From the NCBI GenBank assembly GCA_977020255.1, contig CDROCS010004540.1, positions 1 through 64,000 of the forward strand: a stretch of 64,000 nucleotides of DNA, read 5' to 3'. This DNA comes from Obrimoposthia wandeli. Its lineage: Eukaryota. The stretch's first letter is position 1; every line of letters begins with the position of its first letter. The notes beneath the pieces are model-generated. The model worked only from the letters and a program-made list of their open reading frames with translations. It was not told the origin of the DNA and did no database searches. Below are positions 16,728 through 31,351 of this stretch, in pieces. Made by a program: the position numbers and the translations under genes.

Positions 16728-16993
16728 AACGTCTCACCAAAACCTTTCAAAGCGATGCAGCGCATGATGTAGCCAAACTTAATTGAAGTGGCAAATAGTA
16801 AAGTCGAGATATGCGCCGCAACCTGAGCCATCAAACTAAAGTGATCTGCAAAAACGTAACTCACCTCTATCGATAGCACCGTCCCTGTTAGGCCTAATAA
16901 CATAAGCCAGTTACCCGCCAATAAAAGCCACTGAAAACGTTCGGCATTTGGAATAGCGGGGAGGTATTCTGAAAACTGAAAGTGTGAGTACAT
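16724..16993 (-). CDS. Small 2-TM hypothetical protein
   Basis: 89 aa with two hydrophobic segments. Overlaps the nnrS start by 4 nt. First ORF after the sigma54 promoter. Confidence 0.65.
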   Translation of the reverse strand: MYSHFQFSEYLPAIPNAERFQWLLLAGNWLMLLGLTGTVLSIEVSYVFADHFSLMAQVAAHISTLLFATSIKFGYIMRCIALKGFGETL

Positions 16994-17034
16994 AACAAGC
17001 CAACCTAGATTTAATTCATTCTTAATCTAGCTAT

Positions 17035-17050
17035 TGCGAAGAGCGTGCCA
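17035..17050 (-). promoter_or_regulatory. Sigma54 (-24/-12) promoter for orf-nnrS-hmp
   Basis: Minus strand TGGCACGCTCTTCGCA = GG-N10-GC, facing away from norR. Confidence 0.8.
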
Positions 17051-17098
17051 ACTGCAATTATCATTATATTTCAGGGGTTTGGGAGAGAAGACAACAAA

Positions 17099-17147
17099 AA
17101 TCGAGTCATTATGACTCACACATAATAAGAGTCATAATGACTCGATT
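17099..17147. promoter_or_regulatory. Two NorR binding sites (GT-N7-AC)
   Basis: GTCATTATGAC at 17105-17115 and GTCATAATGAC at 17131-17141, inside a perfect 19-bp inverted repeat. Confidence 0.85.
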
Positions 17148-17201
17148 GTGCTATATTGATCACATCGAATTTATTTTTATCTAACATTTAATTGGACAGT
17201 T

Positions 17202-18856: not shown

Positions 18857-18884
18857 TAGACTCTAACCGCATGATCAGAGTCTA
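18857..18884. terminator. Hairpin between convergent norR and the zinc-ribbon gene
   Basis: TAGACTCT-N12-AGAGTCTA followed by tttt. Confidence 0.4.
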
Positions 18885-18950: not shown

Positions 18951-19496
18951 TTACTCATAAGACAAATATTGCAAAACTTGTGCACGATTCGACTCTTTTG
19001 CTATCCATTCACGAATTTTATCCGCTTCTTTAACCGTTTCTTCGCCTAACATATCGACAAAACGCTGACGGCGAGTTTCTTCTGTCACCTGCTTACGCAC
19101 CTGTCGCTGCCACTGCTCGGTAAAGACCGCAGGCATTTTCGCCCCCAGATTAAGCGATTTTAATAATGACCATTCGCCTTTATCAAGCCAAGCTTCATCA
19201 CAATTAGCACATAAATCTAAGCGGTTATCATGCCCACTGGAGATTCGATACTTGGTCATGATGCGACTGCACTTTGGGCAACCCATTGCTGCATGAGTAT
19301 TTTCAGCATCTTCAACGTGTATTTCTTCTGCTTGCGCACTCTCAGTTGCAGAAGCAATACCAAAACGCTCAGCCCAGTCTCTGTAATACAACAGAGAGAC
19401 AAATATACCTTGGCACTCGTTACATCCCATCGCTGATAAACCCTGCTCCATCTTAGTCGGGTGTAAATCAGGACTTTTACATTTTGGGCATTTCAT
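18951..19496 (-). CDS. Double zinc-ribbon (zf-TFIIB-type) protein
   Basis: CPKC..CNEC and CPKC..CANC..WLDKGE. AAGGA SD upstream. Confidence 0.8.
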   Translation of the reverse strand: MKCPKCKSPDLHPTKMEQGLSAMGCNECQGIFVSLLYYRDWAERFGIASATESAQAEEIHVEDAENTHAAMGCPKCSRIMTKYRISSGHDNRLDLCANCDEAWLDKGEWSLLKSLNLGAKMPAVFTEQWQRQVRKQVTEETRRQRFVDMLGEETVKEADKIREWIAKESNRAQVLQYLSYE

Positions 19497-19511
19497 ATTA
19501 GCTTCCTTACT

Positions 19512-19556
19512 TTTTACTATCTATCGTTTTACTATCTATCGCTCTAAAATCTATGG
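19512..19556. repeat. 15-bp tandem repeat (2 exact copies plus 1 degenerate)
   Basis: ttttactatctatcg x2, then ctctaaaatctatgg, directly 3' of the ATPase stop. Confidence 0.75.
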
Positions 19557-19558
19557 TT

Positions 19559-22500
19559 CTAGTTTTTATCGACTTTTTTAACGCTGTATTCTGTTTCCAA
19601 AGCCCTTAACTGAGTTGAAATTTCTTTCATCTTGTCATGAGTTTTTAAATCGATATCAATTTTTCGATCCATCGAACGCACAATGGGAAAGATACTATTT
19701 TCCATGGTATCGGCTAAAGCTTTCAGTATTTTATCCAACCCCGGCACTGGTTGGTTGATGACTTCAACTTTAGGTGCAATTTGCTTTGAGGACTGTTGAG
19801 CAATGAGTTTGATCCCATTAGAGACTACTGATGCAAATTGGCTCAACGATTGATTCAATCCTTCTAGCTGCTTGATACTCGCAGTTTCATAAGGCTGTTC
19901 TTCGCTTCTGCGCAATGCCTCTGCATTTCTAAAAAGTATCTCTTCGTTTCTGTAGTGTGCTTCTGTTTCTATACGAGATTGCTTATCCCGCTCACGCATT
20001 TGATGTGTTTGCTCGGCATTTTCGCCAAGAGATTTCACGCCATTCACAAGATCAACAAGTTGCGCAATGACCTTCCCACCCACATCCGCATCATCACCAC
20101 CCATGGCTTTGTTACGAATAAAGTCGGCTTTTATCTTCGCCCAGCGAGTAGCTTCTTCATCGGTCATTTCACCGCGCAGCTCTGCCAGCTTCAATAAATT
20201 TTCTTCAGAGCCATTAGTTAATAACTGTGATTCACCAACATAATGATCGGCAATCATCTGCATCAACTCGCCATGATTCATAACCGAAGATACTTTTTCG
20301 GCCATTTTATTCATATTACGATAACTACCTTGCAACCTAAATGAAGGCTCAATACGGTATTCATCCGACTGTGCAGCCGAAGCGATATATTGCTGATTAA
20401 TTTTCAATACCACATCTTGAATGACAAACAGCTTTTTCAATACAGCCGTTATTTCATTAATCTCAGCACCACTGTATTGATGACTTAAATCAGTGGTCGC
20501 AATACTTTCGCCTTTCGTCATGCGCACAATTTTATAGAGATCGTTTAAATCTCGTGTTGCTAAAGGTGCTAGAACAGAATTCGAAGTCATACAGTTTTCG
20601 ACATAACTCAATGCAAATTGCTCATCCATACCTCCTAGAATGTCACCTAGGTTGTAAATATCCGCACGGTTTGCCAACATATCAGGCACTTGGAAAGCTT
20701 CGCCTGTTTCGGTATAGGGGTTACCCGCCATAACGACGCAGAACTTTTTACCGCGCATGTCATAGGTTTTAGTTTTCCCTTTCCAAATACCTTCGATGCG
20801 ACGAGTACCATCACATAAAGAAATAAACTTCTGTAAAAACTCAGGATGCGTATGCTGAATATCATCGAGATACAGCATCACGTTTGTTCCCATTTCTAAA
20901 CCGAGATTTAATTTCTCTAATTCTTGACGGGCAGTCGCATTCGGAGCTTGCTCTGGATCCAGCGATAAAACATCATGCCCTAATGAAGGACAATTAATTT
21001 TCATGAAGATCAAACCTAAGCGGCTTGCGACATATTCCATCAGAGTCGTTTTACCGTAACCTGGTGGAGAAATCATCATCAACAAACCCATTAAATCAGA
21101 ACGTTTATTCTCACCTAATGTCCCCATTTGCTTGGCTAAGTTATCACCAATTAATGGCAAGTAAGATTCATTAATTAAACGGTTACGTACAAAAGAGCTT
21201 AGTGGCTTAGGCTTAAACGATTCAAGACCTAACAAGTCTCTTTCTTGCTCAATAATTCCCTGACGCATTTTATGATAATGATGAAAACCCGTAACAACAC
21301 GCTGTTGATGGTCATCTAAGCGCTGTAAGAATTCATCAATCGCCAATGTCATCGTTTGCTTATCGATTCGAGGGTGATCACCCAATAAACCAGTAATCGT
21401 TAATTCAGTATCGACTTCCGTGGGCCGACGTTCTATTCGACCTTCGGCATTGATCATCGCCACGGCTTCCGGAATATAGCGCGATAAGTGTGTTAGCCCC
21501 TTACCTTCTACTAATGCGGTCAACCAAGATTGAGTCAAATTCCAGCGCTGAGCAACTTTTCCTTTGAGCGTATCCAGCGTGCCATTCAACTTACGCCACG
21601 AAGAAGAGTCTAAAGAATTCTTCAATTCGTTAACAAGTTGCTGTGCATATTTACTGGCAATAAATTCAATACGATCACGGCCTAATTCATGCACAAAATA
21701 ATCAGAACTTCTGCTTAATTCATGCTGCGTTGAAGGCAAACCATAATGATCATTAAAATCCGTTAATGCTTGCAGTATTTCAGCACGTAATAATTGAATC
21801 GCTTTGTTATTATTAAAAATTTCTTTCATTTGAAAAGCTGATTGCGCGCGCTCGTGCCAGCTTTGTGTTTGTATTTTCAATGCTAACAAATTGTCTGCCG
21901 CATCACTTTCTAGATGTTGAATATTGGCCCAGAAAATTTGCGCAAGTCCACGACATAATGGATCAAATCTTAATTGATCAGCACTGTCCAGCGCCGGTAA
22001 TAATTTCTGTAATAGCAATACTGCATCGTGGTCATGAATACCTTTTTCATAACCTTCTTTATAACGTGGATTAGCAAAATCACGCACTAAGCTGCTGAGC
22101 TTAGCTTCGTCTAATAATGCATGTTTAAGCAATTCGTTATTCAGACCATCAGTATTGTTGTCTGCCGCTTGTATGATTAAGGCAACTAGGTATTCACTGC
22201 GATAAACCTCTGGGCTTTCAGATTCAATCGCCATTTCCCAGAAAGGTCTTAACTCTATTAAATCAGTACGGGTTAACTCTTCAAAATAATCGGTACCGGT
22301 TAAGTGAATGTTTAGCTCACCATTTCTCGGCACTATGGTTAAATCGAGTTCTTGGGTATTAACACTGAATTTATGACGCGGGCCCAGCTTAATAACATTG
22401 CCGCCATCTTCATAAATATCTGTTTTATCTCTTAGCGAGCGTAACGCTTGTTCTTTTATTGACTTAAAACGAGATTCGACATCATCCGCTTTAACTGAAT

Positions 22501-25018
22501 TTTCTAATTCACGTAGGCGCTCGACCATGTCTCGGGTTTTAAGTACCAATGAATCGGAAGCAAAATAGGTATTAAGTTGCTCGGCATCGGTAAACTTTAA
22601 CGAACGGCGTTCGATACTGCTTAATATTCTATTCGCCGCATCCGTCACTGATTGCGCTTTGCGTAATCGTTCATCAAGCAATAACTGCTTATGACTTTCG
22701 AAAGATTGATAAACTTCATCTCTCTTCGCCATAATATCGCTAAGAAACTCTTCGAAGTCGCTGAACTGGCTTTCCAGTTCTTCTAGCTGTACTAGTAAGC
22801 GAGATAGCTGTTCATCGCAACGCTCTGGAGTCGTCGACATCCCCAAAGCATTTGTAATACTTTGTGAGAATAATTTAAATTGGGCGCTAAACTGAGCGAC
22901 TGCCTCTTCTGAACCTACCGATTTCTGCTTATGCTTAGCGGCCGCCTTGCTTTGATTCAGCTTTGAGTAAACTTCAGAAATAGCATCAATAATACGAGTA
23001 CGTACCGTCGCATCATTTACTTTAAGTGAGGACATCAACTCTGATAATAAATCTAGGCCTGAAGCAGTTTCTTCAATTTGTTCGATAATAGGTGCCAATA
23101 TGGCAATGGTTTCAGCATCCTTTACGTCCTTATCAAACGTTTTAATCTTGTCGAAATACGGTGATAGCGCCGCATCTTGAGATAAGAATTCAACCGTGCT
23201 TTCGCTGAGTTTCTCTTGCGCCTGAATTAATTGCTGATCCAACTCTTCTAAACGATCAGTATTGATATAACGGTATTCTTTGATCGTTGCGAGATGGCCA
23301 CGCTGCTGGCGTAATGAATTTAACGCTGCAACAAACTCTTCTGCTACTTGCCAATTTTCAGGACGAATAGAGATAATGAGTTTTTGCTGTTCTTCTTCTG
23401 CATTTGCCATCGCAAGTTGAGACTGCTGGCGAATACTCTGAACTTTTTCAAATTCATCAATAACGAGTTCAGAGGTTGTTGATATTTGTTTTATTAAAGC
23501 CGCTATCGAATTATTTTTATCGACGAGAGCTTCCTGACTGCTTGAATACTCTTCAATCCAATAATGTGAATCAAAAAAACGATTGGCTGTTTTACTGAGT
23601 TCTTCATAAATTCTTGCTGATACCGTTTGATCAGAAATCATGCGATGCAAACTGTATAAGTCAGAGACACCACGAACTAATGAGGCATTCCCTATCTTGC
23701 CAAAGAAGCTCTGGCTAACATCTGCGCGACTGGCATAGTCCACACTGACATACGCCGTTTGCCAAATTTGCATTGGGTGTATACGTGTTGGTTCATTCTC
23801 AGCCGAGAAAATCACCAGTATGCCATCTTCTGCCAGCGCATAACCGTGACCGTAAATAGGGTTTTGCATCGACTTGCTGATTAGATTGTAAGAAAACAAA
23901 CCAAACAAACCTTGCTCAGGCTCATAAAAAACAAATAATACATCTTCCCCATTCGGGGATTTAATCATGCGCTTAAATTTAAGCGACTGGCCATTTTCAA
24001 GTGAGGCTAAAGCATCCCCTGCAAATGTTTTCATTTCGCCAGTTTGCAGGTAATAGCCGCCAGGAAATATAATGCCATGATCTTCTGGCAACTGGACACA
24101 AGACTGACCAATATCGTCAATTTTAACCACTTCATCGGTTAAGGAATTGAAAACAAAATAACGCCACTGCTCTTCACGATAAGGCAGTATTTTTAACAGT
24201 ATAAGCGCCCCGACACTGGCATAGAAAAACTGGCCATCATCTAAGGATTGAGTCCCGTCTTCAACAGGCTCACTATAAATGCCTTTACCATTTTCGGTAT
24301 TGTTTTCGATCTTAATGGTTAGATCACCATTAATCGTTTCTACAAATACTTTATCTAGAATATTAATATGAGGATGACGACCATGTTCAGTATTTTCACG
24401 ATCTGTGGCTGTCCATTCAAAATCGTATGCACTCGGCAACTGAATATCACGTTCGCCGCGATTATCAATATACGTTATATCTTTACCATCAGCAGAAATA
24501 GACCAACGGAAAACACGAATATCTTCTAGACGCTCACCAATTTGAAAGCCTGCTAATAACTTGCCATCTTTGACTGTTAGCTGCACAAGTCGAGTTTGCT
24601 TGTAATAACGATACAGTTCTAAGAAATCACTTTGAAAAGATGCTGACGTTAAAAAACTGTCTTTATGACTAACGGCTTCAAGGCTGTAACTTTCACCCTC
24701 AACATTTAATTTGAATAACGAGAATACATCTTCAATATGGGTTTCTTTTTTTAAACCAATAAATACGTTGTAACCAAAAAGAAGATAATCACCAATTTGA
24801 ACCATATCGCGTGCGACACAGTTATTTTCTGTGCGTACCCGTACTCGAGAAATAACACTCAGATCTGAACTTCCGAATTCAGATAAGCGCGCATCATTTA
24901 AAGCCCGAGCCTGCTGGTTTAATAATCGCCCTTGCTCGACTAAGCGCTTACGAATAACTTCATAGGCACCACCTTCTGCAACGGCATTTTCTACTTGATT
25001 GGGGTTTTGCTCAGCCAT
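19559..25018 (-). CDS. Giant AAA+ ATPase (DUF3686 / 'DNA repair ATPase' family), 1819 aa
   Basis: Walker A SPPGYGKTT, Walker B LYLDD, sensor-1 VMAGNPY, Arg-finger LANRAD. Beta-rich N-terminus and long coiled-coil middle. Gene context matches the Pseudomonas PA3728-like locus (from memory). Confidence 0.8.
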   Translation of the reverse strand: MAEQNPNQVENAVAEGGAYEVIRKRLVEQGRLLNQQARALNDARLSEFGSSDLSVISRVRVRTENNCVARDMVQIGDYLLFGYNVFIGLKKETHIEDVFSLFKLNVEGESYSLEAVSHKDSFLTSASFQSDFLELYRYYKQTRLVQLTVKDGKLLAGFQIGERLEDIRVFRWSISADGKDITYIDNRGERDIQLPSAYDFEWTATDRENTEHGRHPHINILDKVFVETINGDLTIKIENNTENGKGIYSEPVEDGTQSLDDGQFFYASVGALILLKILPYREEQWRYFVFNSLTDEVVKIDDIGQSCVQLPEDHGIIFPGGYYLQTGEMKTFAGDALASLENGQSLKFKRMIKSPNGEDVLFVFYEPEQGLFGLFSYNLISKSMQNPIYGHGYALAEDGILVIFSAENEPTRIHPMQIWQTAYVSVDYASRADVSQSFFGKIGNASLVRGVSDLYSLHRMISDQTVSARIYEELSKTANRFFDSHYWIEEYSSSQEALVDKNNSIAALIKQISTTSELVIDEFEKVQSIRQQSQLAMANAEEEQQKLIISIRPENWQVAEEFVAALNSLRQQRGHLATIKEYRYINTDRLEELDQQLIQAQEKLSESTVEFLSQDAALSPYFDKIKTFDKDVKDAETIAILAPIIEQIEETASGLDLLSELMSSLKVNDATVRTRIIDAISEVYSKLNQSKAAAKHKQKSVGSEEAVAQFSAQFKLFSQSITNALGMSTTPERCDEQLSRLLVQLEELESQFSDFEEFLSDIMAKRDEVYQSFESHKQLLLDERLRKAQSVTDAANRILSSIERRSLKFTDAEQLNTYFASDSLVLKTRDMVERLRELENSVKADDVESRFKSIKEQALRSLRDKTDIYEDGGNVIKLGPRHKFSVNTQELDLTIVPRNGELNIHLTGTDYFEELTRTDLIELRPFWEMAIESESPEVYRSEYLVALIIQAADNNTDGLNNELLKHALLDEAKLSSLVRDFANPRYKEGYEKGIHDHDAVLLLQKLLPALDSADQLRFDPLCRGLAQIFWANIQHLESDAADNLLALKIQTQSWHERAQSAFQMKEIFNNNKAIQLLRAEILQALTDFNDHYGLPSTQHELSRSSDYFVHELGRDRIEFIASKYAQQLVNELKNSLDSSSWRKLNGTLDTLKGKVAQRWNLTQSWLTALVEGKGLTHLSRYIPEAVAMINAEGRIERRPTEVDTELTITGLLGDHPRIDKQTMTLAIDEFLQRLDDHQQRVVTGFHHYHKMRQGIIEQERDLLGLESFKPKPLSSFVRNRLINESYLPLIGDNLAKQMGTLGENKRSDLMGLLMMISPPGYGKTTLMEYVASRLGLIFMKINCPSLGHDVLSLDPEQAPNATARQELEKLNLGLEMGTNVMLYLDDIQHTHPEFLQKFISLCDGTRRIEGIWKGKTKTYDMRGKKFCVVMAGNPYTETGEAFQVPDMLANRADIYNLGDILGGMDEQFALSYVENCMTSNSVLAPLATRDLNDLYKIVRMTKGESIATTDLSHQYSGAEINEITAVLKKLFVIQDVVLKINQQYIASAAQSDEYRIEPSFRLQGSYRNMNKMAEKVSSVMNHGELMQMIADHYVGESQLLTNGSEENLLKLAELRGEMTDEEATRWAKIKADFIRNKAMGGDDADVGGKVIAQLVDLVNGVKSLGENAEQTHQMRERDKQSRIETEAHYRNEEILFRNAEALRRSEEQPYETASIKQLEGLNQSLSQFASVVSNGIKLIAQQSSKQIAPKVEVINQPVPGLDKILKALADTMENSIFPIVRSMDRKIDIDLKTHDKMKEISTQLRALETEYSVKKVDKN

Positions 25019-25067
25019 GCGAGATCCTTGTGTTCTTACGATTGTCGTTCCGGACGATTAATGCAAA

Positions 25068-25086
25068 GGGCATAATAACTATGCCC
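25068..25086. other. Intergenic hairpin between the flotillin and ATPase genes
   Basis: GGGCATA-ATAAC-TATGCCC, with no clear U-tract on the coding strand. Confidence 0.45.
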
Positions 25087-25091
25087 TCGCA

Positions 25092-25142
25092 TTGTCTTAA
25101 ATACTAACTTGTCTTAAATACTAAGTTGGCTTAAATACTCAA
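25092..25142. repeat. 17-bp tandem repeat x3
   Basis: ttgtcttaaatactaac/ttgtcttaaatactaag/ttggcttaaatactcaa, directly 3' of the flotillin stop. Confidence 0.85.
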
Positions 25143-25147
25143 TCGTA

Positions 25148-27109
25148 TTAGCTATTAGTCGTGATTTCGCTATCACTACTTGCTTTCTTCTTGCTTTGAT
25201 TTTCCATCACGGTTGCTAATAACGCGCCGACTGTGCTGCTCTTCTGAGCAACACCATCAATCGCTTTACCTAATGATAGAGACTTAGAGAAGGTATCGAA
25301 GAAGTGGCCTTCACCACCCACAATATCGATTTTCGCTTTTTGCAGTGCTGTTGAAAGAACAGCCGCATTATCACGAGCAATCTCTTTACCTGCATCAAGG
25401 GTCGCTATTGCTTCTTTGAATGCTGTTTCTAAGCTCATACGGAATTCTTCGTGATCACGTGCTTGCTCACTCATGCCGCCCATAGCATCGAATTTCTCAA
25501 CCAGACCTTCGGCTTCTGCTTTAAAGTGCTCGCGAGTAACATCTGCTTCAGCAAGACCAACGTCCTTCGTTGCTTTCGCTTGTGCGCTGCCTTTTGCACT
25601 GATAACTTCTGCACCGGCCAAACCTGTTTCACGTAATGCTGTCGCTTCAGATGTGCCTTTAGCTGCAATAACGGATGCTTCTGCTAAACCTTCTTTTTCT
25701 AATGCTTCTGCTTTAGCTTCTTGTACTTTCGCTTCTGCTAAGCCAGTCGCTGCTTGCTCTGCTTGCACACCTTCGGCAAGTTTCTTCTTAGATTCAGCTT
25801 CTTTGGCAGATGCTTCTAAATTGGCTTGTGCCAACGTTGTAATTTCTACCGCTTTGAATTTAGCCGCTTGTTCTTGCGCTTCAGCCGCTTTCACTTGCTT
25901 AACTTTCAATTCATCAGCGTCACCTTCTGCAGCCAATACTTGTATTTGCTTCAAGCGATCGGCTTCAGAGACTTCACGTACTTCTTTAATACGCTCTTCT
26001 TCAATCGCCACGGTCTTATCAACAACAACACGTTCACGAATCACATTAGCAATTTCTTTTTTCTCGATTTCAATCGCTTTTTCAGCTTCGATAGTTTGCA
26101 AGTCAACTTCGCGATTACGCGCAACGATTTCTAGATCTCTAGCGCGGGTTACTTTTTCAACTTCAATAACGACAGCACGCTGACGATTCTGTTCGGCTAC
26201 TTCGACTTCACGCTTTTGATTTTCAGTTTGTACCGCTAAGTCTTGCTCAACTTGTATACGAGTCGACTCTGACTTGCCACGCTCTTCTTCTTGAACCTTA
26301 AGTGTTTCTGCTTCTTCACGGGCACGAATAGTTAAAACTTCACGCTCTTGCTTCGCTTCTGCATCCGCTTCTTGACGCTCTAGCTCCAACATGGCTTCAC
26401 GAGTTTCAACATTCTTCTTTTTAATCGCTAAATTTTCGTTTTGCTCAAGCTCATTAGTGATTACATTTTGATTCGCAGTTAATTCAGTAATTTTCTTAAT
26501 ACCTTCGGCATCAAGAATGTTATTAGGGTCTAGCGCATGCTTTGGCGTTTGCTCAAGATAATCAATCGCCACATCTTCTAATACATAACCATTTAAATCG
26601 TCACCAATAACTTCGACAATTTTTTCACGGAATTGTAAGCGGTTTTCAAACAGTTGAACGAATTCAATTTGCTTACCCACTGTTTTCAAAGCTTCTGAGA
26701 ACTTAGCGGCAAATAATTCATAAACCGCGTCTTTATCAGAGGCACGATCAGCACCAATCGATTTGGCAACTCGTAATACATCTTCTGAAGTTTCATTGAC
26801 TCGTAGATAAAAAGCAACGGTGATATCCGCACGCATATTATCTAAGCAGATCAAGCCGTCTTTTCCGCGACGATCTACTTCTAAAGTAATTAACGAGACC
26901 TTCATTAATTCTTTCTTATAGATAACTGGGATTACTAAGGCACCAGTAAAATGCACCTTAGGAGTCGAACTCATGTCATTGACGATTAAGGCAGTACCCT
27001 GCGCCACCTTTATATAAAAGGATTGAAAGACAAATAAAACCCCAATAATAATAAGAACAAAAATACCGATACCCGTTAGTATCGGCATTAATACTGATAA
27101 ATCAGCCAT
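25148..27109 (-). CDS. Flotillin-like SPFH/band-7 protein (YqiK-like)
   Basis: N-terminal TM, SPFH core (RADITVAFYLRV, FSEALKTVG), long E/A/K coiled coil and G.AEA repeats. Confidence 0.88.
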   Translation of the reverse strand: MADLSVLMPILTGIGIFVLIIIGVLFVFQSFYIKVAQGTALIVNDMSSTPKVHFTGALVIPVIYKKELMKVSLITLEVDRRGKDGLICLDNMRADITVAFYLRVNETSEDVLRVAKSIGADRASDKDAVYELFAAKFSEALKTVGKQIEFVQLFENRLQFREKIVEVIGDDLNGYVLEDVAIDYLEQTPKHALDPNNILDAEGIKKITELTANQNVITNELEQNENLAIKKKNVETREAMLELERQEADAEAKQEREVLTIRAREEAETLKVQEEERGKSESTRIQVEQDLAVQTENQKREVEVAEQNRQRAVVIEVEKVTRARDLEIVARNREVDLQTIEAEKAIEIEKKEIANVIRERVVVDKTVAIEEERIKEVREVSEADRLKQIQVLAAEGDADELKVKQVKAAEAQEQAAKFKAVEITTLAQANLEASAKEAESKKKLAEGVQAEQAATGLAEAKVQEAKAEALEKEGLAEASVIAAKGTSEATALRETGLAGAEVISAKGSAQAKATKDVGLAEADVTREHFKAEAEGLVEKFDAMGGMSEQARDHEEFRMSLETAFKEAIATLDAGKEIARDNAAVLSTALQKAKIDIVGGEGHFFDTFSKSLSLGKAIDGVAQKSSTVGALLATVMENQSKKKASSDSEITTNS

Positions 27110-27159
27110 AACAATTACTCCATTTGTTTTTAAGTTTTAAATTTATTAATTAAATTAGT

Positions 27160-27828
27160 TTATTTCAGAAATTCAGTTTCAGAGATAACTCGATAAGCAT
27201 GCTGGTCATTAAGGTATTCCAGCAATACAACACGATCACCTTTTTTATAGGTTTCGTTATTGATTGTTCGGGCCTTCAAAATCAACCCTGCTCCACCATC
27301 CGCTAAGAGTACTTCTCCAAAGCCAGAATCAAGTCGTAGTGAGCGCACGATTGCCGTTTGCCCAAGCAGATTTTTGACTGTATTTTTATTCATATTAGCA
27401 AACAAAGGTTTCAACGGCTTAATGACCTGTGCCGTGATCAATACCGCGACGTATAAGGAGCCGACAAGTATGGGCAAACCGACAATGTATTCTAAGAAGC
27501 CATCAGGTATAAACGGAAAGATAAAATACACGGCAAAGTAACAGATCAACCAGCCAAATAGGGCTAAGAGGGATATAACAATCGTTAACGGCACGCCATT
27601 TAAACCAAGTTTTAACAACAGTCCCGCCAACTGGTGCACACCACCGTCTGCATCAGTATCGCCTTCAGGCATATCAACATCTAATACATCTAAATCAATA
27701 ATACCCAATACTGCGATCAACCAATAAACAGCGGTCAATGCTAATAAGAGAGTGAAAAACAGCGTCGGAAATGAAGCTATATTCTGATAGAAAGGATCCA
27801 TTTTATCGCTTAAAAATATCGCAAACAT
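27160..27828 (-). CDS. YqiJ/NfeD-like membrane protein with C-terminal OB fold
   Basis: TM, acidic DLDVLDVD loop, further TMs, then GQTAIV..GEV..GDRVVLLEY. This is the typical flotillin partner. Confidence 0.75.
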   Translation of the reverse strand: MFAIFLSDKMDPFYQNIASFPTLFFTLLLALTAVYWLIAVLGIIDLDVLDVDMPEGDTDADGGVHQLAGLLLKLGLNGVPLTIVISLLALFGWLICYFAVYFIFPFIPDGFLEYIVGLPILVGSLYVAVLITAQVIKPLKPLFANMNKNTVKNLLGQTAIVRSLRLDSGFGEVLLADGGAGLILKARTINNETYKKGDRVVLLEYLNDQHAYRVISETEFLK

Positions 27829-27931
27829 TTTAACCTCCTTGTGTTAATTCACTATAAGCAAGGCGCACTATATTACCGATATTTCGATCCGTTAACAGCC
27901 GCTATTTTATTTTTCTAACCTTATTAAAAGG

Positions 27932-28618
27932 CTACTGTTTATTTTTTAATCGTTCCAATACATCTTTGGCTTGCTGACCTTGATTAGCAATTCCGGCTTT
28001 TTGCAATTTATCGTGCAAAGACTGTTCAGAAGTATTAGCGTGAAGCTCTTCTGTAGCCTGCAACTTCGCAGCATTCAGAGTTTGCTTCTGCTTAATTCGC
28101 TCTAACGAATCCATGGCTGTTTGCAATTTAGTATTAGACCCGGCATAACGTTGCGATACAGACTCTTGCGCGCGCTGCACACTCTCGGTCGCTTTCACGG
28201 TATCAATCTGTTGCTTCAAGCGCTTAATATTATTGTCCGCAGAGGCAATGGCCGCTTTTAAACTATTTGCACTGGCAGAAAAACCGTCAACAACCTCTGA
28301 CTCAGAGGATTGTAGATTTTCTAACTCAGCAATTTTTTCAGCAATTTCTAGCGCCAATACATCATCATTTTTTTCTAATGCTTTAATCGCATAACCTTCG
28401 TACTCTGTGATACTGCCTTTTAGCGTATTGACCTTCTGCTCGGCCACTTTTTGCTGTGCAATAATAGAGACAAGACCTTCTTTGGACAGCTTTAATTCAC
28501 TGGAGGCATCACGCACCTCTTGATCCAGAATTCGGAGCGCTTGAGTATCAACGACAGCCTCTCCTGCTTCATTCATTCCACCCCGTAATGCCGTTAACAT
28601 TTTTGACCATAAGTTCAT
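27932..28618 (-). CDS. PspA/IM30 (bacterial ESCRT-III) family protein, YjfJ-like
   Basis: Amphipathic start MNLWSKMLTALRG, LDQEVRDA, AIKALE, coiled coil, C-terminal VLERLK. GAGGAG SD. Confidence 0.9.
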   Translation of the reverse strand: MNLWSKMLTALRGGMNEAGEAVVDTQALRILDQEVRDASSELKLSKEGLVSIIAQQKVAEQKVNTLKGSITEYEGYAIKALEKNDDVLALEIAEKIAELENLQSSESEVVDGFSASANSLKAAIASADNNIKRLKQQIDTVKATESVQRAQESVSQRYAGSNTKLQTAMDSLERIKQKQTLNAAKLQATEELHANTSEQSLHDKLQKAGIANQGQQAKDVLERLKNKQ

Positions 28619-28644
28619 GATTGATCTCCTCGATCTAAGTTAAA

Positions 28645-29298
28645 TTAAACTAAGCCAATTTCAGGCATCGGTTGAAAAGTTAAAAACTCAGCGTAGGCTT
28701 GAGTCGCTTGTATTACGTTATTCGCCAGCATGTCGATTTCTAACAAGACATTCGACAATAATGAAGAGGCGCTTAAAGCCCCAAACATATGATAAACCGA
28801 GTCACCATTCGTCATCGTATCTAAACTGATGGTTGAAAGTGGAAAGTACTTATGGGTACGTAGCACAGCATCATTAAATCCTGCCACATCCGATACCGCA
28901 TCGACTGGCCACAATACCGATTCAACAATTATTTGCTCGCCGACAACCGTTAGAAATACAGGTAAGTCGCCAAAAGCTTTCATCTCGATGAAAAGTGAAG
29001 CATCGATACCATCAATTAATTCTATCGTTGCCTGATTCGTCGAAAATAGTGGTTCTTGTTCTAGTGCTGCCTTTAAGCTCTGGCTTGTCCATAGCTCTGA
29101 CATTGCATGTGAGTTTGTCATGACAAAATCTCCGTCTCTTATCGTTTCAACCAAGTTGGGTTCACGTAGTGTTTTTTCCGCCTGAGTCAGCAACCGTGCG
29201 TTCTCTGGACGAATCCAAACTTCCTTCTTCACCAGCCCCTGCTCTCTCAAGCGGCGGCGGAATTCTCTTTGATAGTGTGCTGATGTTTTTTGTGTCAT
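28645..29298 (-). CDS. YjfI/DUF2170 family protein with a basic N-terminal extension
   Basis: C-terminal core (FGDLPVFLTV..QIIVESVLW..KYFPLSTI..MFGALS) is YjfI-like. The first ~59 aa are Arg-rich (YQREFRRRLREQGLVKKEVWIRPE). Confidence 0.75.
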   Translation of the reverse strand: MTQKTSAHYQREFRRRLREQGLVKKEVWIRPENARLLTQAEKTLREPNLVETIRDGDFVMTNSHAMSELWTSQSLKAALEQEPLFSTNQATIELIDGIDASLFIEMKAFGDLPVFLTVVGEQIIVESVLWPVDAVSDVAGFNDAVLRTHKYFPLSTISLDTMTNGDSVYHMFGALSASSLLSNVLLEIDMLANNVIQATQAYAEFLTFQPMPEIGLV

Positions 29299-29303
29299 GA
29301 CTA

Positions 29304-29332
29304 AACATACCTATTACATGTAATGCCGTCAA
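29304..29332 (-). promoter_or_regulatory. Sigma70-like promoter TTGACG-N17-TATGTT
   Basis: -35 at 29332-29327 and -10 at 29309-29304. The ATG begins 6 nt after the -10. Confidence 0.6.
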
Positions 29333-29368
29333 GCATTACATGTAATATAATTCCGTATTACATGTAAC
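29313..29368. promoter_or_regulatory. Three palindromic operator-like sites ATTACATGTAA(T/C) at 22-bp period
   Basis: Copies start at 29313, 29335 and 29357. An extra half-site ATGTAAC lies at 29375-29381. Confidence 0.75.
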
Positions 29369-29533
29369 AAATAAATGTAACTTAACCCTTGCTGCTCCAC
29401 GCCTCAACATCCTAGAGTGAAGTGCTAAAAGGAACAACTTGGAATGTTTAAAAAAGAGAACTGGGGAACGTATAAATAAGAGGGCAACAGCGTAGCGAAA
29501 AAACACCAAGGAAAAAGACGAGAAGAACTCGCC

Positions 29534-31351
29534 TTATGAGTTACTGATCCAGAGTGTTTGATAAGGCAGCAGCGGCACTAGCATATCTTGGCGGGTCATT
29601 TCCTTACCAGAAATAAGATCATGCCAGTCATCCGTGCTGACCAAGTTAATATCCGATAACATAAACTGCTGCGCTAAATCACTGATATTACTAATACAGA
29701 AAATACTCTGCTTTCTATCGTGAGACTGACGCCAATAAGCGAAAATAGAATCCCCTAGATGCAGCGTAAATTGCGGCGCATTCGGGTGAAACGCTTTTTG
29801 CTGCTGTCGAATGGCTAATAATCGCTTTAACTCTGTGAATACTTTTTTGTGATGGCCTTTCTCTTCAGCCAGCTCATCATCAACCTGTTCGCTATTAAAC
29901 GGTTCACTGTCGGCTAAAAGCACTTCCAATTCATCGTATTGCCACTGGTGTCGATTTATCGAGCGATTGTGACCCGTATTTTCCATCCGCTGATAATCAT
30001 TGCGCGTCGCTAACAAGCTATGAACATAGATACCAGGAATACCTTCTAGACCCAGCATAATGGCATGGGCGCAGACAAAGCGGTCGATGCCCAGTTCGTC
30101 CTTGCCTTTTAACGTGCCTTGCAGCGCATCAAATAACGAGATATTCACTTCATAAGGCTTTTGAACCGCTTCGCCTTTCTCGTTTTCTAACGCGCGCCAA
30201 GAAATTCGGCCGCCAAAGTTTTGCAAGGTATCGACCAGAACTTGGGTTTCATCGTCTGCCAATATCCCCTCGACCGGTCTTAGCCCCATCCCATCATGGG
30301 AGGCAATAAAATTAAAATACGTGGTGCCTAATTGAGCTGGGGGCATGCTCATTAACCAAAGCTTTAAATGATGGCTATTGCCTGTGATCAAGGTATTGAT
30401 TAATAACGGGGGTAAAGCAAAGTTATACACGCAGTGTGCTTCGTTGGCATTGCCAAAATACGATAGATTTTCGCGATTGGGAATATTGGTTTCGGTGATA
30501 ATGACAGCATCGCGCTGTGCATGCTCAATTAATAACCTTAATAAGCGTACTACGTTATGTGTTTCTTCAAGATTAATACTGGGCGAGTCGATTTTCTTCC
30601 ATAAAAAAGCAATCGCATCGAGGCGAAAAATGCGTACGCCCATATCCAAGTATTGGCGGATAATTTTCACAAATTGTAATAAAACTTCAGGATTTCTAAA
30701 ATCTAAATCAACCTGATCATGGCTAAAAGTACACCAGACATATTGCAGCCCTTTATTCGTTTGAGTCTCTCTTAATAGCGGACTGGTTCTTGGCCTGACC
30801 ACCTGGGTTAAGTCAGCCTCTAATGACTCGGTATAAAAGTAGTCATGACCTGGCCCTTCGCCTTTGATAAAGTTTTGAAACCATAAACTGCGACTTGAAC
30901 AATGGTTAATAACTAGATCAGCCATCAAACGATAGTCTTGGCTTATGCTTTCAATATCTCCCCAATCTCCCAGTGATTCATTCACACTGGAAAAATCCAT
31001 GACTGAAAAACCATCGTCAGAACTGAAAGGGAAAAAAGGCAGAATATGCACGCTGTTAATTAAGCCCTCGCAATACTCATCTAAAAAATGCTTTAAGGTA
31101 ATGAGTGGTTTTTCTTTATCAGATAAAAAACTATCGCCATAAGTGATCATCACGGTAGTCGATTGATCCCACAAATCACTCGGGCGCACCTGGTCGTGAG
31201 AGGCGGCTTGATGGCTCGCACTCTCTAATCTCATTTCTTTTAAAAGTGTTTCGGTAAGCACTTCAAACGGTACGTTAATCTCCGTTTCATGATAGATCAT
31301 TTCTAATAAGTGCTGGCTGCGCTGTAATAATGCGGAATCAAATAAACTCAT
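29534..31351 (-). CDS. GH13_18 sugar phosphorylase, probably glucosylglycerate phosphorylase
   Basis: [18 protein letters not shown] nucleophile, ITETN, ASHDG, and a KPYEVN loop. In operon with GpgS/GpgP. Confidence 0.8.

What the first reader, a model, noticed from the sequence alone, without database searches (positions are those of the whole stretch)
18951..29298. Six-gene membrane-remodelling operon: YjfI, PspA (ESCRT-III), YqiJ/NfeD, flotillin, giant AAA+ ATPase, zinc ribbon
Seen: six co-oriented genes, the five downstream ones each with an SD, gaps of 26-130 nt, and no strong internal terminator. Established: PspA/IM30 proteins are bacterial ESCRT-III homologues; flotillin-NfeD pairs organise membrane microdomains; a similar cluster exists in Pseudomonas aeruginosa (PA3728-PA3732 region, from memory) with no defined mechanism. 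Inference: a complete membrane repair or stress machine in which the ATPase plays the Vps4-like recycling role that most bacterial ESCRT-III systems lack. It could also act in antimicrobial or phage defence. The E. coli yjfKLMC partners are absent here.
Basis: partly seen in the sequence, partly recalled or inferred. Interest (0 to 1): 0.72.

Follow-up and report, generated by a model that had tools for sequence, protein, structure and literature searches.

The report
PspA–flotillin–giant ATPase stress operon
An Oleispira-like marine bacterium carries a real but already described envelope-stress operon (PspA, flotillin, an NfeD-like protein and a giant ATPase), whose ATPase looks like a MoxR/dynein-type motor tied to flotillin, not a Vps4 for PspA.

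Summary
The six minus-strand genes exist exactly as described. They are the orthologue of the Pseudomonas aeruginosa bac cluster (PA3732-PA3728). That cluster was shown to be an operon by RT-PCR (Wallart 2024), and the operon type is catalogued in Ravi 2024. So this is a new member of a known kind.

Gene calls:
- DUF2170/BacA and PspA: confirmed by Pfam and NCBIfam.
- Flotillin and YqiJ/NfeD: confirmed only by profile comparison with E. coli YqiK and YqiJ.

What I add:
- **ATPase class.** The AAA+ module of the 1,819-residue ATPase folds like MoxR-type ATPases (CbbQ, NorQ; Z 17-18). It has a pre-sensor-1 hairpin, so it is not in the Vps4 class.
- **Conserved core.** YqiJ-like, flotillin and ATPase genes were adjacent in 10 of 10 sampled Pseudomonadota that carry the ATPase. 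Only 3-4 of them also had BacA and PspA. The ATPase's partner is therefore more likely flotillin.
- **Regulation.** BacA has an invariant 45-residue N-terminal domain that is missing from the crystal structure. Conserved TTACATGTAA palindromes flank a sigma-70 promoter with a leaderless start. This points to direct autorepression, not sigma-54 control.
- **Sixth gene.** The zinc-ribbon gene here is not the Pseudomonas sixth gene, which is a rhomboid.

The Vps4-like role is unproven and weakened. I found no support for a known anti-phage defence system.

The parts
29304..29367 (-). Promoter and operator region. The -35 TTGACG is at 29327-29332 and the -10 TATGTT at 29304-29309, ending 5 nt before the bacA ATG, which makes a leaderless start likely. 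Three perfect TTACATGTAA palindromes lie at 29314-29323, 29336-29345 and 29358-29367, spaced 22 bp apart.
   Evidence: The palindrome occurs exactly 3 times in 64 kb, all here (0.41 expected). Two copies at about -48 and -26, flanking a TTGAC-like -35, recur in nearly all 80 related loci. No sigma-54 site is present.
28645..29298 (-). bacA. A CesT/YjfI-like DUF2170 domain (aa 68-207) is fused to an invariant N-terminal 45-residue basic helix-strand-helix domain (DNA 29164-29298) by a variable linker.
   Evidence: Pfam DUF2170; NCBIfam NF050185 BacA 300.7 bits. PDB 8q8o covers only aa 68-207. E. coli YjfI equals aa 70-205 only. Alignment A4 shows the N-terminus is the most conserved part. AF2 model.
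27932..28618 (-). bacB, a PspA/IM30 (ESCRT-III superfamily) protein of the YjfJ type.
   Evidence: PF04012 149 bits; 33% identity over the full length to E. coli YjfJ, E 7e-38.
27160..27828 (-). bacC, a YqiJ/NfeD-like inner-membrane protein with 3-4 TM segments and a C-terminal soluble domain.
   Evidence: hhalign vs E. coli YqiJ prob 86.9, E 4e-6; Atlas features 0.96 to YqiJ_N/YqiJ_OB clusters; hydropathy. No Pfam hit passes threshold.
25148..27109 (-). bacD, a flotillin-family SPFH protein with an N-terminal TM segment, an SPFH domain, a long EA-rich coiled coil and a flotillin-type C-terminus.
   Evidence: hhalign vs E. coli YqiK prob 99.9, E 2.3e-31, 404 columns; Atlas 0.99 'flotillin family'; 65-96% identical across the order.
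25067..25087 (-). Stem-loop in the bacD-bacE gap (8 bp stem, weak T tail). It is a candidate leaky terminator or transcript-stabilising hairpin that would set ATPase dosage. It is preceded by three 16-17 nt direct repeats (25092-25139).
   Evidence: z -2.85; hairpin of -10 kcal/mol or better in 62 of 66 loci; compensatory stem changes among Oleispira loci.
19559..25018 (-). bacE, a soluble 1,819-aa ATPase. DUF3686 covers aa 33-486 (DNA 23561-24922), followed by helical/coiled-coil regions that include DUF7902 (aa 617-700, DNA 22919-23170). A single AAA+ module spans aa ~1270-1645 (DNA 20084-21211). Then come a variable linker and a conserved C-terminal peptide (aa ~1750-1800).
   Evidence: Motifs conserved in 45 homologues: Walker A K1323/T1324, Walker B D1385-D1386, sensor-1 N1433, R1451, R1567. 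AF2 model; Foldseek and VIA-align. The family is small: 915 hits in 1.84e9 representatives.
18951..19496 (-). Sixth gene, a soluble protein with two TFIIB-type zinc ribbons and a helical tail. It is a lineage-variable accessory gene.
   Evidence: PF13453 x2. It follows bacE directly only in 8 of 60 loci, and follows a rhomboid gene in L023 and L050. It lies next to a bacCDE trio that has no bacA/bacB in the flank fetched, in L103.
18857..18884 (.). 12-bp hairpin between the convergent zinc-ribbon gene and the NorR-like gene, the likely end of both transcripts. The T run is on the + strand.
   Evidence: (z -2.91).
29515..29535 (-). Terminator-like hairpin plus T run directly after the upstream alpha-amylase gene. 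It would isolate the bac promoter.
   Evidence: upstream gene identity.

Best explanation
This is the Oleispira-lineage copy of the Pseudomonadales 'bac' envelope-stress operon. It is built from two modules. Module 1 is an old, widely distributed trio: BacC (YqiJ/NfeD-like membrane protein), BacD (flotillin) and BacE (giant cytosolic AAA+ protein). Module 2 is an add-on dyad: BacA (CesT/YjfI-type chaperone) and BacB (PspA, ESCRT-III superfamily). Proposed working: BacC and BacD build a flotillin assembly on the cytoplasmic face of the inner membrane, and this assembly recruits or organises PspA polymers at damaged membrane. The precedent is B. subtilis, where the SPFH protein YdjI recruits PspA. 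BacE, an active MoxR/dynein-class (not Vps4-class) ATPase, probably oligomerises and uses ATP to assemble, open or dismantle the flotillin/NfeD assembly, and possibly PspA secondarily. Regulation: BacA dimers bind, through their conserved N-terminal domain, to TTACATGTAA palindromes that overlap a sigma-70 promoter with a leaderless start, and so repress the operon. Binding of BacA's chaperone domain to BacB under stress would relieve repression. A hairpin after bacD probably lowers ATPase dosage. The zinc-ribbon protein is a lineage-specific accessory. Shown: gene identities, orthology, synteny, motif and operator conservation, and the fold class of the ATPase. Inferred: every protein-protein, protein-DNA and remodelling step.
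For: Orthology and operon: BacA equivalog; bacA-E collinear in about 75 of 80 loci. RT-PCR operon in P. aeruginosa (PMC10948618). PA3728-PA3732 rise together on phage infection and in a proteome study (PMC12041424, PMC13637947). Metatranscriptome contigs of an Oleispira relative bridge all four junctions that were laid. Core trio: 10 of 10 sampled Pseudomonadota with DUF3686 have bacC-bacD-bacE adjacent, and only 3-4 have bacA/bacB. Distant loci L093, L108 and L111 have a BacD-type flotillin directly upstream of the ATPase. ATPase class and activity. Autorepression: an invariant N-terminal 45 aa that is absent from E. coli YjfI and from PDB 8q8o. Palindromes are unique to the promoter, conserved across the order and absent at E. 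coli yjfI. A bacA deletion over-accumulates the Bac proteins (PMC10948618). A BacA-BacB complex is predicted by AlphaFold2 at 0.98 (PMC13092808). SPFH-PspA link: PMC8581546.
Against: No experiment on any BacE homologue was found. A flotillin client is inferred from gene linkage only. One distant BacE homologue stands alone without flotillin (L094). A MoxR-type partner (VWA protein) is absent, and no helix-2 hairpin is seen in the model, so the clade assignment rests on structural ranking with modest TM-scores (0.42/0.62). The BacA N-terminal domain has only moderate model confidence (pLDDT 55-77) and no significant family match: PF11455 MazE-like reaches E 0.014 in one homologue only. The published model for P. 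aeruginosa is sigma-54 control. Deleting the P. aeruginosa flotillin (PaFlo3) gave almost no phenotype (PMC13086221).
Confidence: 0.6

Rival explanations
1. One reading: BacE is the functional equivalent of Vps4. It binds PspA (ESCRT-III) polymers and disassembles or recycles them by ATP-driven subunit extraction.
For: BacE shares the operon with PspA throughout Pseudomonadales and is co-induced with it (PMC12041424, PMC13637947). An HMM profile of the AAA module hits classical-clade NVL/Rix7/VCP best by sequence, but only over 35-70 residues around Walker A. Ravi 2024 suggests ATP-dependent remodelling for PspA-linked AAA+ proteins.
Against: Structural neighbours are MoxR, dynein and Rea1, with the classical clade 4-5 Z units lower. 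A pre-sensor-1 hairpin is present. The stretch where I place pore loop 1 (after the second core strand) has no aromatic-hydrophobic-Gly motif in the sequence. No MIT domain was detected by Pfam. In most sampled genomes the ATPase occurs with flotillin and the YqiJ-like gene but with no PspA or BacA gene in the flank searched.
Confidence: 0.17
2. The cluster is an anti-phage or anti-competitor defence system, for example a membrane-based abortive-infection or damage-response system.
For: PA3728-PA3732 are up-regulated in all phage-infected P. aeruginosa samples (PMC12041424). BacE is among the most RsmA-repressed proteins (PMC8855297), and the Gac/Rsm pathway controls defence against antagonism in P. 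aeruginosa (PMC8926400). PspA is historically the 'phage shock' protein.
Against: No PADLOC model matches apart from coiled-coil noise with E around 3e-4. Its neighbours are housekeeping genes (alpha-amylase, NorR/NnrS), not a defence island. Order and sequence are conserved across a whole order, which fits vertical inheritance. Induction by phage is expected of any envelope-stress response.
Confidence: 0.08
3. The cluster is primarily a biofilm and rhamnolipid regulatory system, as the NCBIfam name 'biofilm formation regulator BacA' implies.
For: P. aeruginosa bacA and bacB mutants show reduced biofilm, swarming, rhamnolipids and virulence (PMC2587700, PMC10948618).
Against: The proteins are membrane-structural (PspA, flotillin, NfeD-like) plus a motor. 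Deleting the flotillin gene lowered biofilm by only about 20% (PMC13086221). The cluster is conserved in many marine Pseudomonadales that are unrelated to P. aeruginosa. The operator occurs only at its own promoter within these 64 kb. The phenotypes fit a pleiotropic effect of envelope stress.
Confidence: 0.1
4. BacE is a DNA-repair or chromosome-partition ATPase, as in the Pfam description of DUF3686, and its neighbourhood is coincidental.
For: Only the Pfam label and weak RuvB_N similarity over the P-loop.
Against: Linkage to flotillin and the YqiJ-like gene is strict across phyla. No DNA-binding or nuclease domain was detected. The RuvB matches cover about 40 residues.
Confidence: 0.02

Closest known systems
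Pseudomonas aeruginosa bacABCDEF (PA3732-PA3727 / PA14_16140-16200), 'biofilm-associated cluster'
   Same: The first five genes are orthologous, in the same order and with similar spacing. BacA has the same N-terminal extension, and the same promoter palindromes occur in Pseudomonas species.
   Different: In the Pseudomonas loci examined the gene after bacE is a rhomboid-family membrane protein, often overlapping bacE by 4 nt. I infer this is P. aeruginosa BacF; no P. aeruginosa locus was among those fetched. Here the sixth gene is a double zinc-ribbon protein, and no rhomboid homologue was found in the window. Published work proposes a sigma-54 promoter and used a 146-residue BacA; neither fits what is conserved here.
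CesT/Tir-PspA + band-7/flotillin + novel AAA+ + YqiJ/YuaF operon class of Ravi et al. 2024 (PMC11237479)
   Same: The same domain set and the same idea of abbreviated flotillin-YqiJ-ATPase operons. My sampling reproduces it.
   Different: [quoted passage not shown] Here the AAA+ module is placed structurally next to MoxR/dynein-type ATPases, and the BacA DNA-binding extension and operator are described.
Bacillus subtilis pspA-ydjGHI (samGHI) operon (PMC8581546)
   Same: PspA is encoded with an SPFH protein, membrane proteins and a protein that starts with a Cys-X2-Cys motif (YdjG). The SPFH protein is needed to bring PspA to the membrane. An internal terminator sets stoichiometry.
   Different: It has no giant ATPase and no CesT-type chaperone. 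It is controlled by sigma-W. YdjI is a soluble SPFH protein, whereas BacD has its own TM segment.
E. coli yjfIJ(KLMC) and yqiJK
   Same: BacA aa 70-205 resembles YjfI (31% identity), BacB resembles YjfJ (33%), BacD resembles YqiK and BacC resembles YqiJ.
   Different: In E. coli the two pairs are unlinked, no DUF3686 ATPase exists (control genomes), YjfI lacks the N-terminal domain, no palindromes are present, and the polyamine-related yjfKLMC genes accompany yjfIJ.
ESCRT-III / Vps4 (CdvB/CdvC)
   Same: An ESCRT-III-superfamily polymer is encoded next to an AAA+ ATPase.
   Different: The ATPase belongs to a different AAA+ class, no MIT domain was found, it is about four times larger, and it is evolutionarily linked to flotillin rather than to PspA.
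MoxR-type AAA+ remodellers (CbbQ-CbbO, NorQ-NorD, RavA-ViaA) and the SPFH-AAA+ pairing HflK/C-FtsH
   Same: These are the best structural matches of the AAA+ module (Z 16-18), and the Pfam AAA_5 hit is above threshold. HflK/C-FtsH is a precedent for an SPFH cage working with an AAA+ machine (established knowledge).
   Different: There is no VWA/MIDAS partner gene. BacE has about 1,400 extra residues (DUF3686, coiled coils). Walker B is DD rather than DE. There is no protease domain as in FtsH.

Membership tests
bac operon (P. aeruginosa bacA-bacF) | BacA equivalog (NCBIfam NF050185) at or above the curated cut-off | tested here: met
   300.7 bits against a cut-off of 300, covering residues 1-207 of 217. 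It is only just above the cut-off.
bac operon (P. aeruginosa bacA-bacF) | Gene order DUF2170 - PspA - YqiJ-like - flotillin - DUF3686 ATPase on one strand | tested here: met
   Collinear with Pseudomonas and other Pseudomonadales loci.
bac operon (P. aeruginosa bacA-bacF) | Sixth gene of the same family as the Pseudomonas one | tested here: not met
   Pseudomonas loci carry a Rhomboid (PF01694) gene after bacE. The window has a zinc-ribbon gene and no rhomboid homologue. That the rhomboid is P. aeruginosa BacF is my inference from other Pseudomonas species.
bac operon (P. aeruginosa bacA-bacF) | Co-transcription of the genes | tested here: inconclusive
   RNA-library contigs of a relative that is about 85-90% identical bridge the A-B, B-C, C-D and D-E junctions (records 9, 12, 13, 14). 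Contigs cannot prove a single transcript, and DNA carry-over is possible.
PspA/IM30 (ESCRT-III superfamily) | Full-length match to PF04012 | tested here: met
   149.3 bits, positions 1-218 of 220; 33% identity to YjfJ.
Flotillin / SPFH | Sequence-profile match to Band_7/Flot or to a solved SPFH protein | tested here: not met
   No Pfam hit even at E 10. No PDB hit with the single sequence or with a 27-sequence profile.
Flotillin / SPFH | Profile-profile homology to a recognised flotillin over the SPFH and coiled-coil regions | tested here: met
   hhalign vs E. coli YqiK: prob 99.9, E 2.3e-31, 404 columns. Atlas features 0.99.
YqiJ / NfeD-like | Homology to YqiJ across the TM region and the C-terminal domain | tested here: inconclusive
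   Pfam YqiJ_N reaches only E 1.4. hhalign vs E. coli YqiJ gives prob 86.9, E 4e-6, 145 columns. Atlas 0.96 to YqiJ_N/YqiJ_OB clusters. The evidence is consistent but not strong, and the fold was not modelled.
Vps4 / classical AAA clade | Classical-clade AAA fold (no pre-sensor-1 hairpin), with structural neighbours in that clade | tested here: not met
   The model has a hairpin at residues 168-181 between Walker B and sensor 1. MoxR proteins score Z 16-18, against NVL 13.2 and Rpt 12.9.
Vps4 / classical AAA clade | N-terminal MIT domain that binds ESCRT-III tails | tested here: not met
   Pfam finds only DUF3686, DUF7902 and AAA-type families. Residues 1-1239 were not folded, so a cryptic helical bundle is not excluded.
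Vps4 / classical AAA clade | Aromatic pore-loop-1 motif for substrate threading | tested here: not met
   The stretch after the second core strand reads ...PSLGHDVLSLDP... and has no aromatic-hydrophobic-Gly motif. Where pore loop 1 lies is my placement from the model's strand order.
MoxR-type AAA+ (AAA_5 / clade with dynein, midasin) | AAA_5 profile match and closest structural neighbours in the family | tested here: met
   PF07728 25.0 bits against a cut-off of 22, positions 2-125 of 139. CbbQ Z 18.4, NorQ Z about 17, then dynein/Rea1 about 14.
MoxR-type AAA+ (AAA_5 / clade with dynein, midasin) | Partner protein with a VWA/MIDAS domain in the operon | tested here: not met
   None of the six products, nor the flanking genes, has a VWA hit.
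Known anti-phage defence systems (PADLOC-DB 2.0) | Match of any component to a defence-system model | tested here: not met
   Only coiled-coil-type matches to PspA with E above 3e-4; nothing for the other five proteins.
Sigma-54 (PspF-type) controlled psp regulon | A -24/-12 element upstream of the first gene and a cognate activator | tested here: not met
   No TGGCAC-N5-TTGC-like site with up to 2 mismatches lies between 29299 and 29533 on the coding strand. The adjacent sigma-54 activator has a GAF domain and is NorR-like. It is convergent to the operon and divergent from an nnrS operon that does carry such a site.

The most novel reading that the evidence does not exclude
BacE and its roughly 400-900 cluster representatives are a dedicated ATP-driven remodeller of bacterial flotillin (SPFH/NfeD) assemblies. 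It would be a giant MoxR/dynein-class motor that opens, builds or dismantles flotillin cages, with PspA plugged in as a later add-on in Pseudomonadales. In addition, BacA would be a direct autorepressor whose DNA-binding N-terminal domain was cut off in the annotated and crystallised P. aeruginosa protein. That would replace the published sigma-54 model.
Probability: 0.3. Interest if true: 0.68.

Novelty: new member of a known kind. Interest (0 to 1): 0.33.

Why it matters
How closed SPFH/flotillin cages are assembled, opened and turned over is an open question, and so is how bacterial ESCRT-III (PspA) polymers are disassembled without a Vps4. This operon class is one of the few places where a dedicated ATPase is genetically tied to both. 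The analysis here points to flotillin rather than PspA as the first client to test. It gives a concrete domain map and catalytic residues for mutants. It also offers a simple, testable regulatory circuit: BacA N-terminal domain, TTACATGTAA operators and a leaderless sigma-70 promoter. That circuit would revise the current P. aeruginosa model, and P. aeruginosa is an organism in which these genes affect biofilm and virulence phenotypes. The window's own copy is, however, just one more member of a described operon family.

Tried and rejected
- **Sequence searches for BacC and BacD.** Pfam, NCBIfam and PDB searches gave nothing, even with 27-sequence profiles. Only profile-profile comparison with E. 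coli YqiK and YqiJ worked.
- **Sigma-54 promoter.** Searched and not found upstream of bacA. The neighbouring sigma-54 activator was rejected as a PspF analogue: it has a GAF domain, is NorR-like, is convergent to the operon, and is paired with nnrS.
- **PADLOC defence models.** No real hits.
- **The genome search 'relatives'.** It failed because the window's assembly (1.35 Gb, 6,912 contigs) has no relatives in the collection. I re-centred on an Oleispira genome through its locus.
- **RNA evidence.** Only assembled contigs were available, from one marine metatranscriptome of a relative. They show junction-bridging pieces but cannot give transcript ends, strand or level. One contig also runs upstream of the proposed promoter, so the leaderless start is not confirmed.
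- **BacA N-terminal domain.** No significant family was found; PF11455 MazE-like reaches E 0.014 in one homologue only. The AF2 monomer model is of moderate confidence there, so I ran no fold search on it.
- **CsrA/RsmA-like CA-N-GGA motif.** It sits at the bacC and bacE ribosome sites but is conserved only within the Oleispira clade, so I dropped it as a general feature.
- **Not done.** The beta-propeller assignment of DUF3686 is taken from Ravi 2024 and was not tested here. A literature search for 'DUF3686' found no paper.

Full report
**Observation.**
Six ORFs lie on the minus strand at exactly the reported limits. I call them bacA (28645-29298), bacB (27932-28618), bacC (27160-27828), bacD (25148-27109), bacE (19559-25018, 1,819 aa) and a sixth gene (18951-19496).
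- The gaps are 26, 103, 50, 129 and 62 nt. The five downstream genes have GGAG/AGGA-type ribosome sites; the first has none.
- The consensus scan reports no intrinsic terminator inside the cluster. It does report one directly after the upstream alpha-amylase gene, at 29515-29535.
- A 12-bp hairpin (18857-18884) lies between the last gene and a convergent NorR-like gene.
- Base composition is even across the region.

**Gene identities.**
- **BacA, BacB, BacE and the sixth gene.** Pfam gives DUF2170 for BacA and PspA_IM30 for BacB. For BacE it gives DUF3686, DUF7902 and one AAA domain. The sixth gene has two TFIIB-type zinc ribbons.
- **BacA orthology.** NCBIfam calls BacA an equivalog of the Pseudomonas 'biofilm formation regulator BacA', at 300.7 bits against a cut-off of 300.
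- **E. coli counterparts.** BacA residues 70-205 align with the whole of E. coli YjfI (31% identity). BacB aligns with YjfJ end to end (33%).
- **BacC and BacD.** They get no Pfam, NCBIfam or PDB sequence hit, even as 27-sequence profiles. The BacD profile matches E. coli flotillin YqiK at 99.9% probability (E 2e-31, 404 columns). The BacC profile matches YqiJ at 86.9% (E 4e-6). ESM-Atlas features agree: 0.99 flotillin and 0.96 YqiJ/NfeD.
- **Topology.** Hydropathy predicts 3-4 TM segments in BacC and one N-terminal TM segment in BacD. The other four proteins look soluble.
- **Absent partners.** yjfK, yjfL, yjfM and yjfC have no homologue anywhere in the window.

Two of them could not have been verified by ordinary domain searches.

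**Source and conservation.**
- The window is one contig of a 1.35-Gb, 6,912-contig assembly that holds several bacteria. That assembly has three different DUF3686 loci and 18 PspA loci.
- BacA is 94% identical to an Oleispira MAG.
- Among 80 loci recovered with BacA (Oleispira, Pseudomonas, Cellvibrionaceae, Reinekea and others), bacA to bacE are collinear wherever the contig allows.

**What is already published.**
- Macé 2008 (PMC2587700) named PA3729-PA3732 the bac cluster.
- Wallart 2024 (PMC10948618) showed by RT-PCR that six genes, bacA-bacF, are co-transcribed. They found that a bacA mutant over-accumulates the other Bac proteins, and they solved a BacA structure.
[quoted passage not shown] They also described its abbreviated forms and proposed ATP-dependent membrane remodelling.
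- PA3728-PA3732 rise together on phage infection (PMC12041424) and in a proteome study (PMC13637947).
- BacE is strongly RsmA-repressed (PMC8855297).
- A BacA-BacB complex is predicted by AlphaFold2 at 0.98 (PMC13092808).
- Deleting the flotillin PaFlo3 (PA14_16180) had little effect (PMC13086221).

The finding is therefore a new member of a known kind. The remembered P. aeruginosa cluster was correct.

**Transcription in this lineage.**
Only contigs were available. In one marine metatranscriptome, contigs from a relative that is about 85-90% identical cover almost all of 23.9-29.5 kb. They bridge the bacE/bacD, bacD/bacC, bacC/bacB and bacB/bacA junctions (records 9, 12, 13, 14). This fits a polycistronic RNA but does not prove one. 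One contig continues upstream of the promoter, so transcript ends remain unknown.

**The ATPase.**
- **Conservation along the protein.** It is highest in DUF3686 (aa 33-486), in a central block (aa 650-900) and above all in aa 1270-1645.
- **Family size.** A search with that module through 1.84 billion cluster representatives found only 915 proteins at E<=1e-3 (377 at 1e-30). Almost all of the best 150 are proteins of 1,600-2,000 aa with the module at about 1200-1650, or fragments of such proteins. The module is therefore a small, distinct family.
- **Catalytic motifs.** In 45 homologues, Walker A (K1323, T1324), Walker B (D1385-D1386, DD not DE), sensor-1 N1433, R1451 and R1567 are invariant or nearly so. 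I predict an active enzyme.
- **Sequence matches to PDB.** A sequence profile hits classical-clade NVL/Rix7/VCP, but only over the 35-70 residues around the P-loop.
- **Fold.** The AF2 model (pLDDT 86) has a beta-hairpin between the Walker-B strand and the sensor-1 strand.
  - Foldseek ranks MoxR-type CbbQ and NorQ, and also MCM, first; spastin is at rank 27.
  - VIA-align gives CbbQ Z 18.4, NorQ about 17, dynein/Rea1 about 14, ClpA/B/C about 13, NVL 13.2 and Rpt 12.9.
  - Pfam AAA_5 passes its threshold.
- **Conclusion.** The module belongs with the pre-sensor-1-hairpin AAA+ proteins and is nearest to MoxR/dynein, not to Vps4.
- **Missing features.** No MIT domain, no aromatic pore-loop motif and no VWA partner gene were found.

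**Which partner?**
- DUF3686 was found in 10 of 400 evenly drawn genomes of the phylum, besides the centre genome, and in none of 14 model genomes.
- In all 10, bacC-bacD-bacE are adjacent. Three have bacA and bacB, one has a weak bacA-like match, and six have neither in the flank fetched.
- Three distant homologues (L093, L108, L111) have a BacD-type flotillin directly upstream of the ATPase (hmmsearch E 4e-77 to 5e-208). L093 and L111 also have a BacC-type gene, and neither shows a PspA gene in its flank. L108 is a 6.5-kb contig cut inside its flotillin gene, so its upstream genes are unknown.
- One Bacteroidota-like homologue is solitary.
- A second cluster in the same assembly uses a CesT_Tir_1 protein in place of DUF2170 and has an extra 456-aa gene.

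The ancient unit is therefore YqiJ-like plus flotillin plus ATPase. The chaperone-PspA dyad was added later. This makes flotillin/NfeD the more likely client of the motor. In B. subtilis the SPFH protein YdjI is what brings PspA to the membrane (PMC8581546), which offers a way to join the two modules.

**Regulation.**
- **Promoter.** Upstream of bacA there is a TTGACG-17-TATGTT promoter whose -10 ends 5 nt before the ATG. bacA has no SD.
- **Palindromes.** Three perfect TTACATGTAA palindromes at 22-bp spacing overlap the promoter. They are the only three copies in 64 kb (0.41 expected).
- **Conservation of the site.** In nearly all 80 related loci, including Pseudomonas, two or three T[TC]ACATGT[AG]A palindromes sit at about -48 and -26 from the ATG, around a TTGAC-like -35. 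A TAnnnT element lies 5-7 nt before the ATG.
- **BacA N-terminus.** The first 45 residues are the most conserved part of BacA, with synonymous DNA changes, and are followed by a variable linker.
- **What lacks this domain.** E. coli YjfI lacks it, and its locus lacks the palindrome. PDB 8q8o (146 aa) also lacks it and aligns only to residues 68-207. PA3732 was described as a 16-kDa protein (PMC2587700).
- **Model of the domain.** AF2 gives helix (6-19), extended segment (20-30), helix (31-44) at moderate confidence. One homologue weakly matches the MazE-like antitoxin family (E 0.014).
- **Sigma-54.** No sigma-54 element is present.

Together with the published derepression in a bacA mutant, the simplest reading is direct autorepression by BacA. 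Relief could come from BacB binding to its chaperone domain. The published sigma-54 site then probably lies inside the true coding region. That last point is an inference, because I could not map their site.

An earlier first-stage note of this scan (s1-247192) proposed the same operator and autorepressor idea for this window. My cross-genome comparison supports its sequence basis but not yet the binding.

**Dosage.**
- The bacD-bacE gap contains a stem-loop (25067-25087) with a weak T tail. The gap folds better than shuffles (z -2.85), while the B-C and E-F gaps do not.
- Related Oleispira loci keep the stem through paired changes, for example GGGCATA/TATGCCC, GAGCATA/TATGCTC and GGGCGTA/TACGCTC. 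62 of 66 loci have a hairpin of -10 kcal/mol or better in this gap. I ran no control for GC-rich genomes.
- A leaky terminator or a stabilising 3' hairpin that keeps the ATPase scarce is plausible. B. subtilis has a terminator after pspA.

**The sixth gene.**
- In 35 of 60 loci the gene after bacE, often overlapping it by 4 nt, is a Rhomboid-family protein of about 185 aa.
- The zinc-ribbon gene follows bacE directly in only 8 of 60 loci (Oleispira, Bacterioplanoides, Maricurvus and others). It follows the rhomboid in two loci. In L103 it lies next to a bacCDE trio that has no bacA/bacB in the flank fetched.
- I found no rhomboid homologue in the window.
- P. aeruginosa 'BacF' is therefore most likely the rhomboid, so the two 'six-gene operons' differ in their last gene.

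**Rivals.**
- Vps4-like recycling of PspA is not excluded, but the fold class and the gene linkage weaken it.
- Phage defence has no PADLOC support and no island context.
- The biofilm-regulator name describes a phenotype, not a mechanism.
- The 'DNA repair' label of DUF3686 has no support.

**Verdict.**
The theme of membrane stress and remodelling holds. The Vps4 analogy is unproven and less likely than a flotillin-directed MoxR-class motor.
- Novelty is low for the operon itself.
- There are moderate, testable additions on the ATPase class, the conserved core, BacA autoregulation and the variable sixth gene.

Noticed in passing
window 15546-18842: A GAF + sigma-54-activator + HTH_8 protein (17202-18842, +), NorR-like, is divergent from an 89-aa ORF and an nnrS gene (15546-16993, -). 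A near-consensus sigma-54 site, TGGCACGCTCTTCGCA, lies at 17035-17050 (-) in front of them. This looks like a nitric-oxide response unit, and it explains the sigma-54 activator next to the bac operon without linking the two.
   Followed up: partly
G000 contigs C3391 (L097) and C1802 (L096): The 1.35-Gb assembly holds three distinct DUF3686 ATPase loci and 18 PspA loci on different contigs, so several bacteria are mixed into it. The C3391 cluster is a variant: CesT_Tir_1 (136 aa, no N-terminal extension) - PspA - 245 aa - 702-aa flotillin-like - unknown 456 aa - ATPase.
   Followed up: partly
L067:19482-20042, L023:19341-19904, L088:19763-20314 and about 32 further loci: A Rhomboid-family intramembrane protease gene is translationally coupled (4-nt overlap) to the 3' end of bacE in most Pseudomonadales, but is missing from this window. 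SPFH proteins pairing with proteases is a known theme (HflK/C-FtsH, stomatin-NfeD protease), so it may cleave BacC or BacD.
   Followed up: partly
window 29164-29298; PDB 8q8o; PA3732 annotation: The annotated and crystallised P. aeruginosa BacA (146 aa, 16 kDa) appears to start about 60 codons too late. The upstream 45 codons are the most conserved part of the protein across the order. The published 'sigma-54 site upstream of pa3732' would then probably lie inside the coding region.
   Followed up: partly
window 25092-25139 and 19497-19558: There are short tandem direct repeats in two intergenic gaps: three copies of AGTATTTAAG(C/A)CAA(C/G)TT before the bacD-bacE hairpin, and two copies of ACGATAGATAGTAAAA before the zinc-ribbon gene. 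Their function is unknown.
   Followed up: no
window 27829-27850 and 25019-25040 (ribosome sites of bacC and bacE): Both ribosome sites share AACACAAGGA, which fits the CsrA/RsmA CA-N-GGA motif. P. aeruginosa BacE is RsmA-repressed (PMC8855297). However, the motif is conserved only within the Oleispira clade.
   Followed up: partly
BacE aa ~1650-1800 (window ~19616-20069): After the AAA+ lid comes a linker of about 100 residues with almost no conservation. It is followed by a well conserved C-terminal peptide of about 50 residues. The peptide is a candidate docking motif or membrane-binding helix.
   Followed up: no
L049, L054: Stand-alone bacA-bacB dyads, with no bacC-E detected in the contig stretch downstream, keep both the BacA N-terminal extension and the two promoter palindromes. 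The regulator-operator pair therefore belongs to the dyad, not to the flotillin-ATPase trio.
   Followed up: partly
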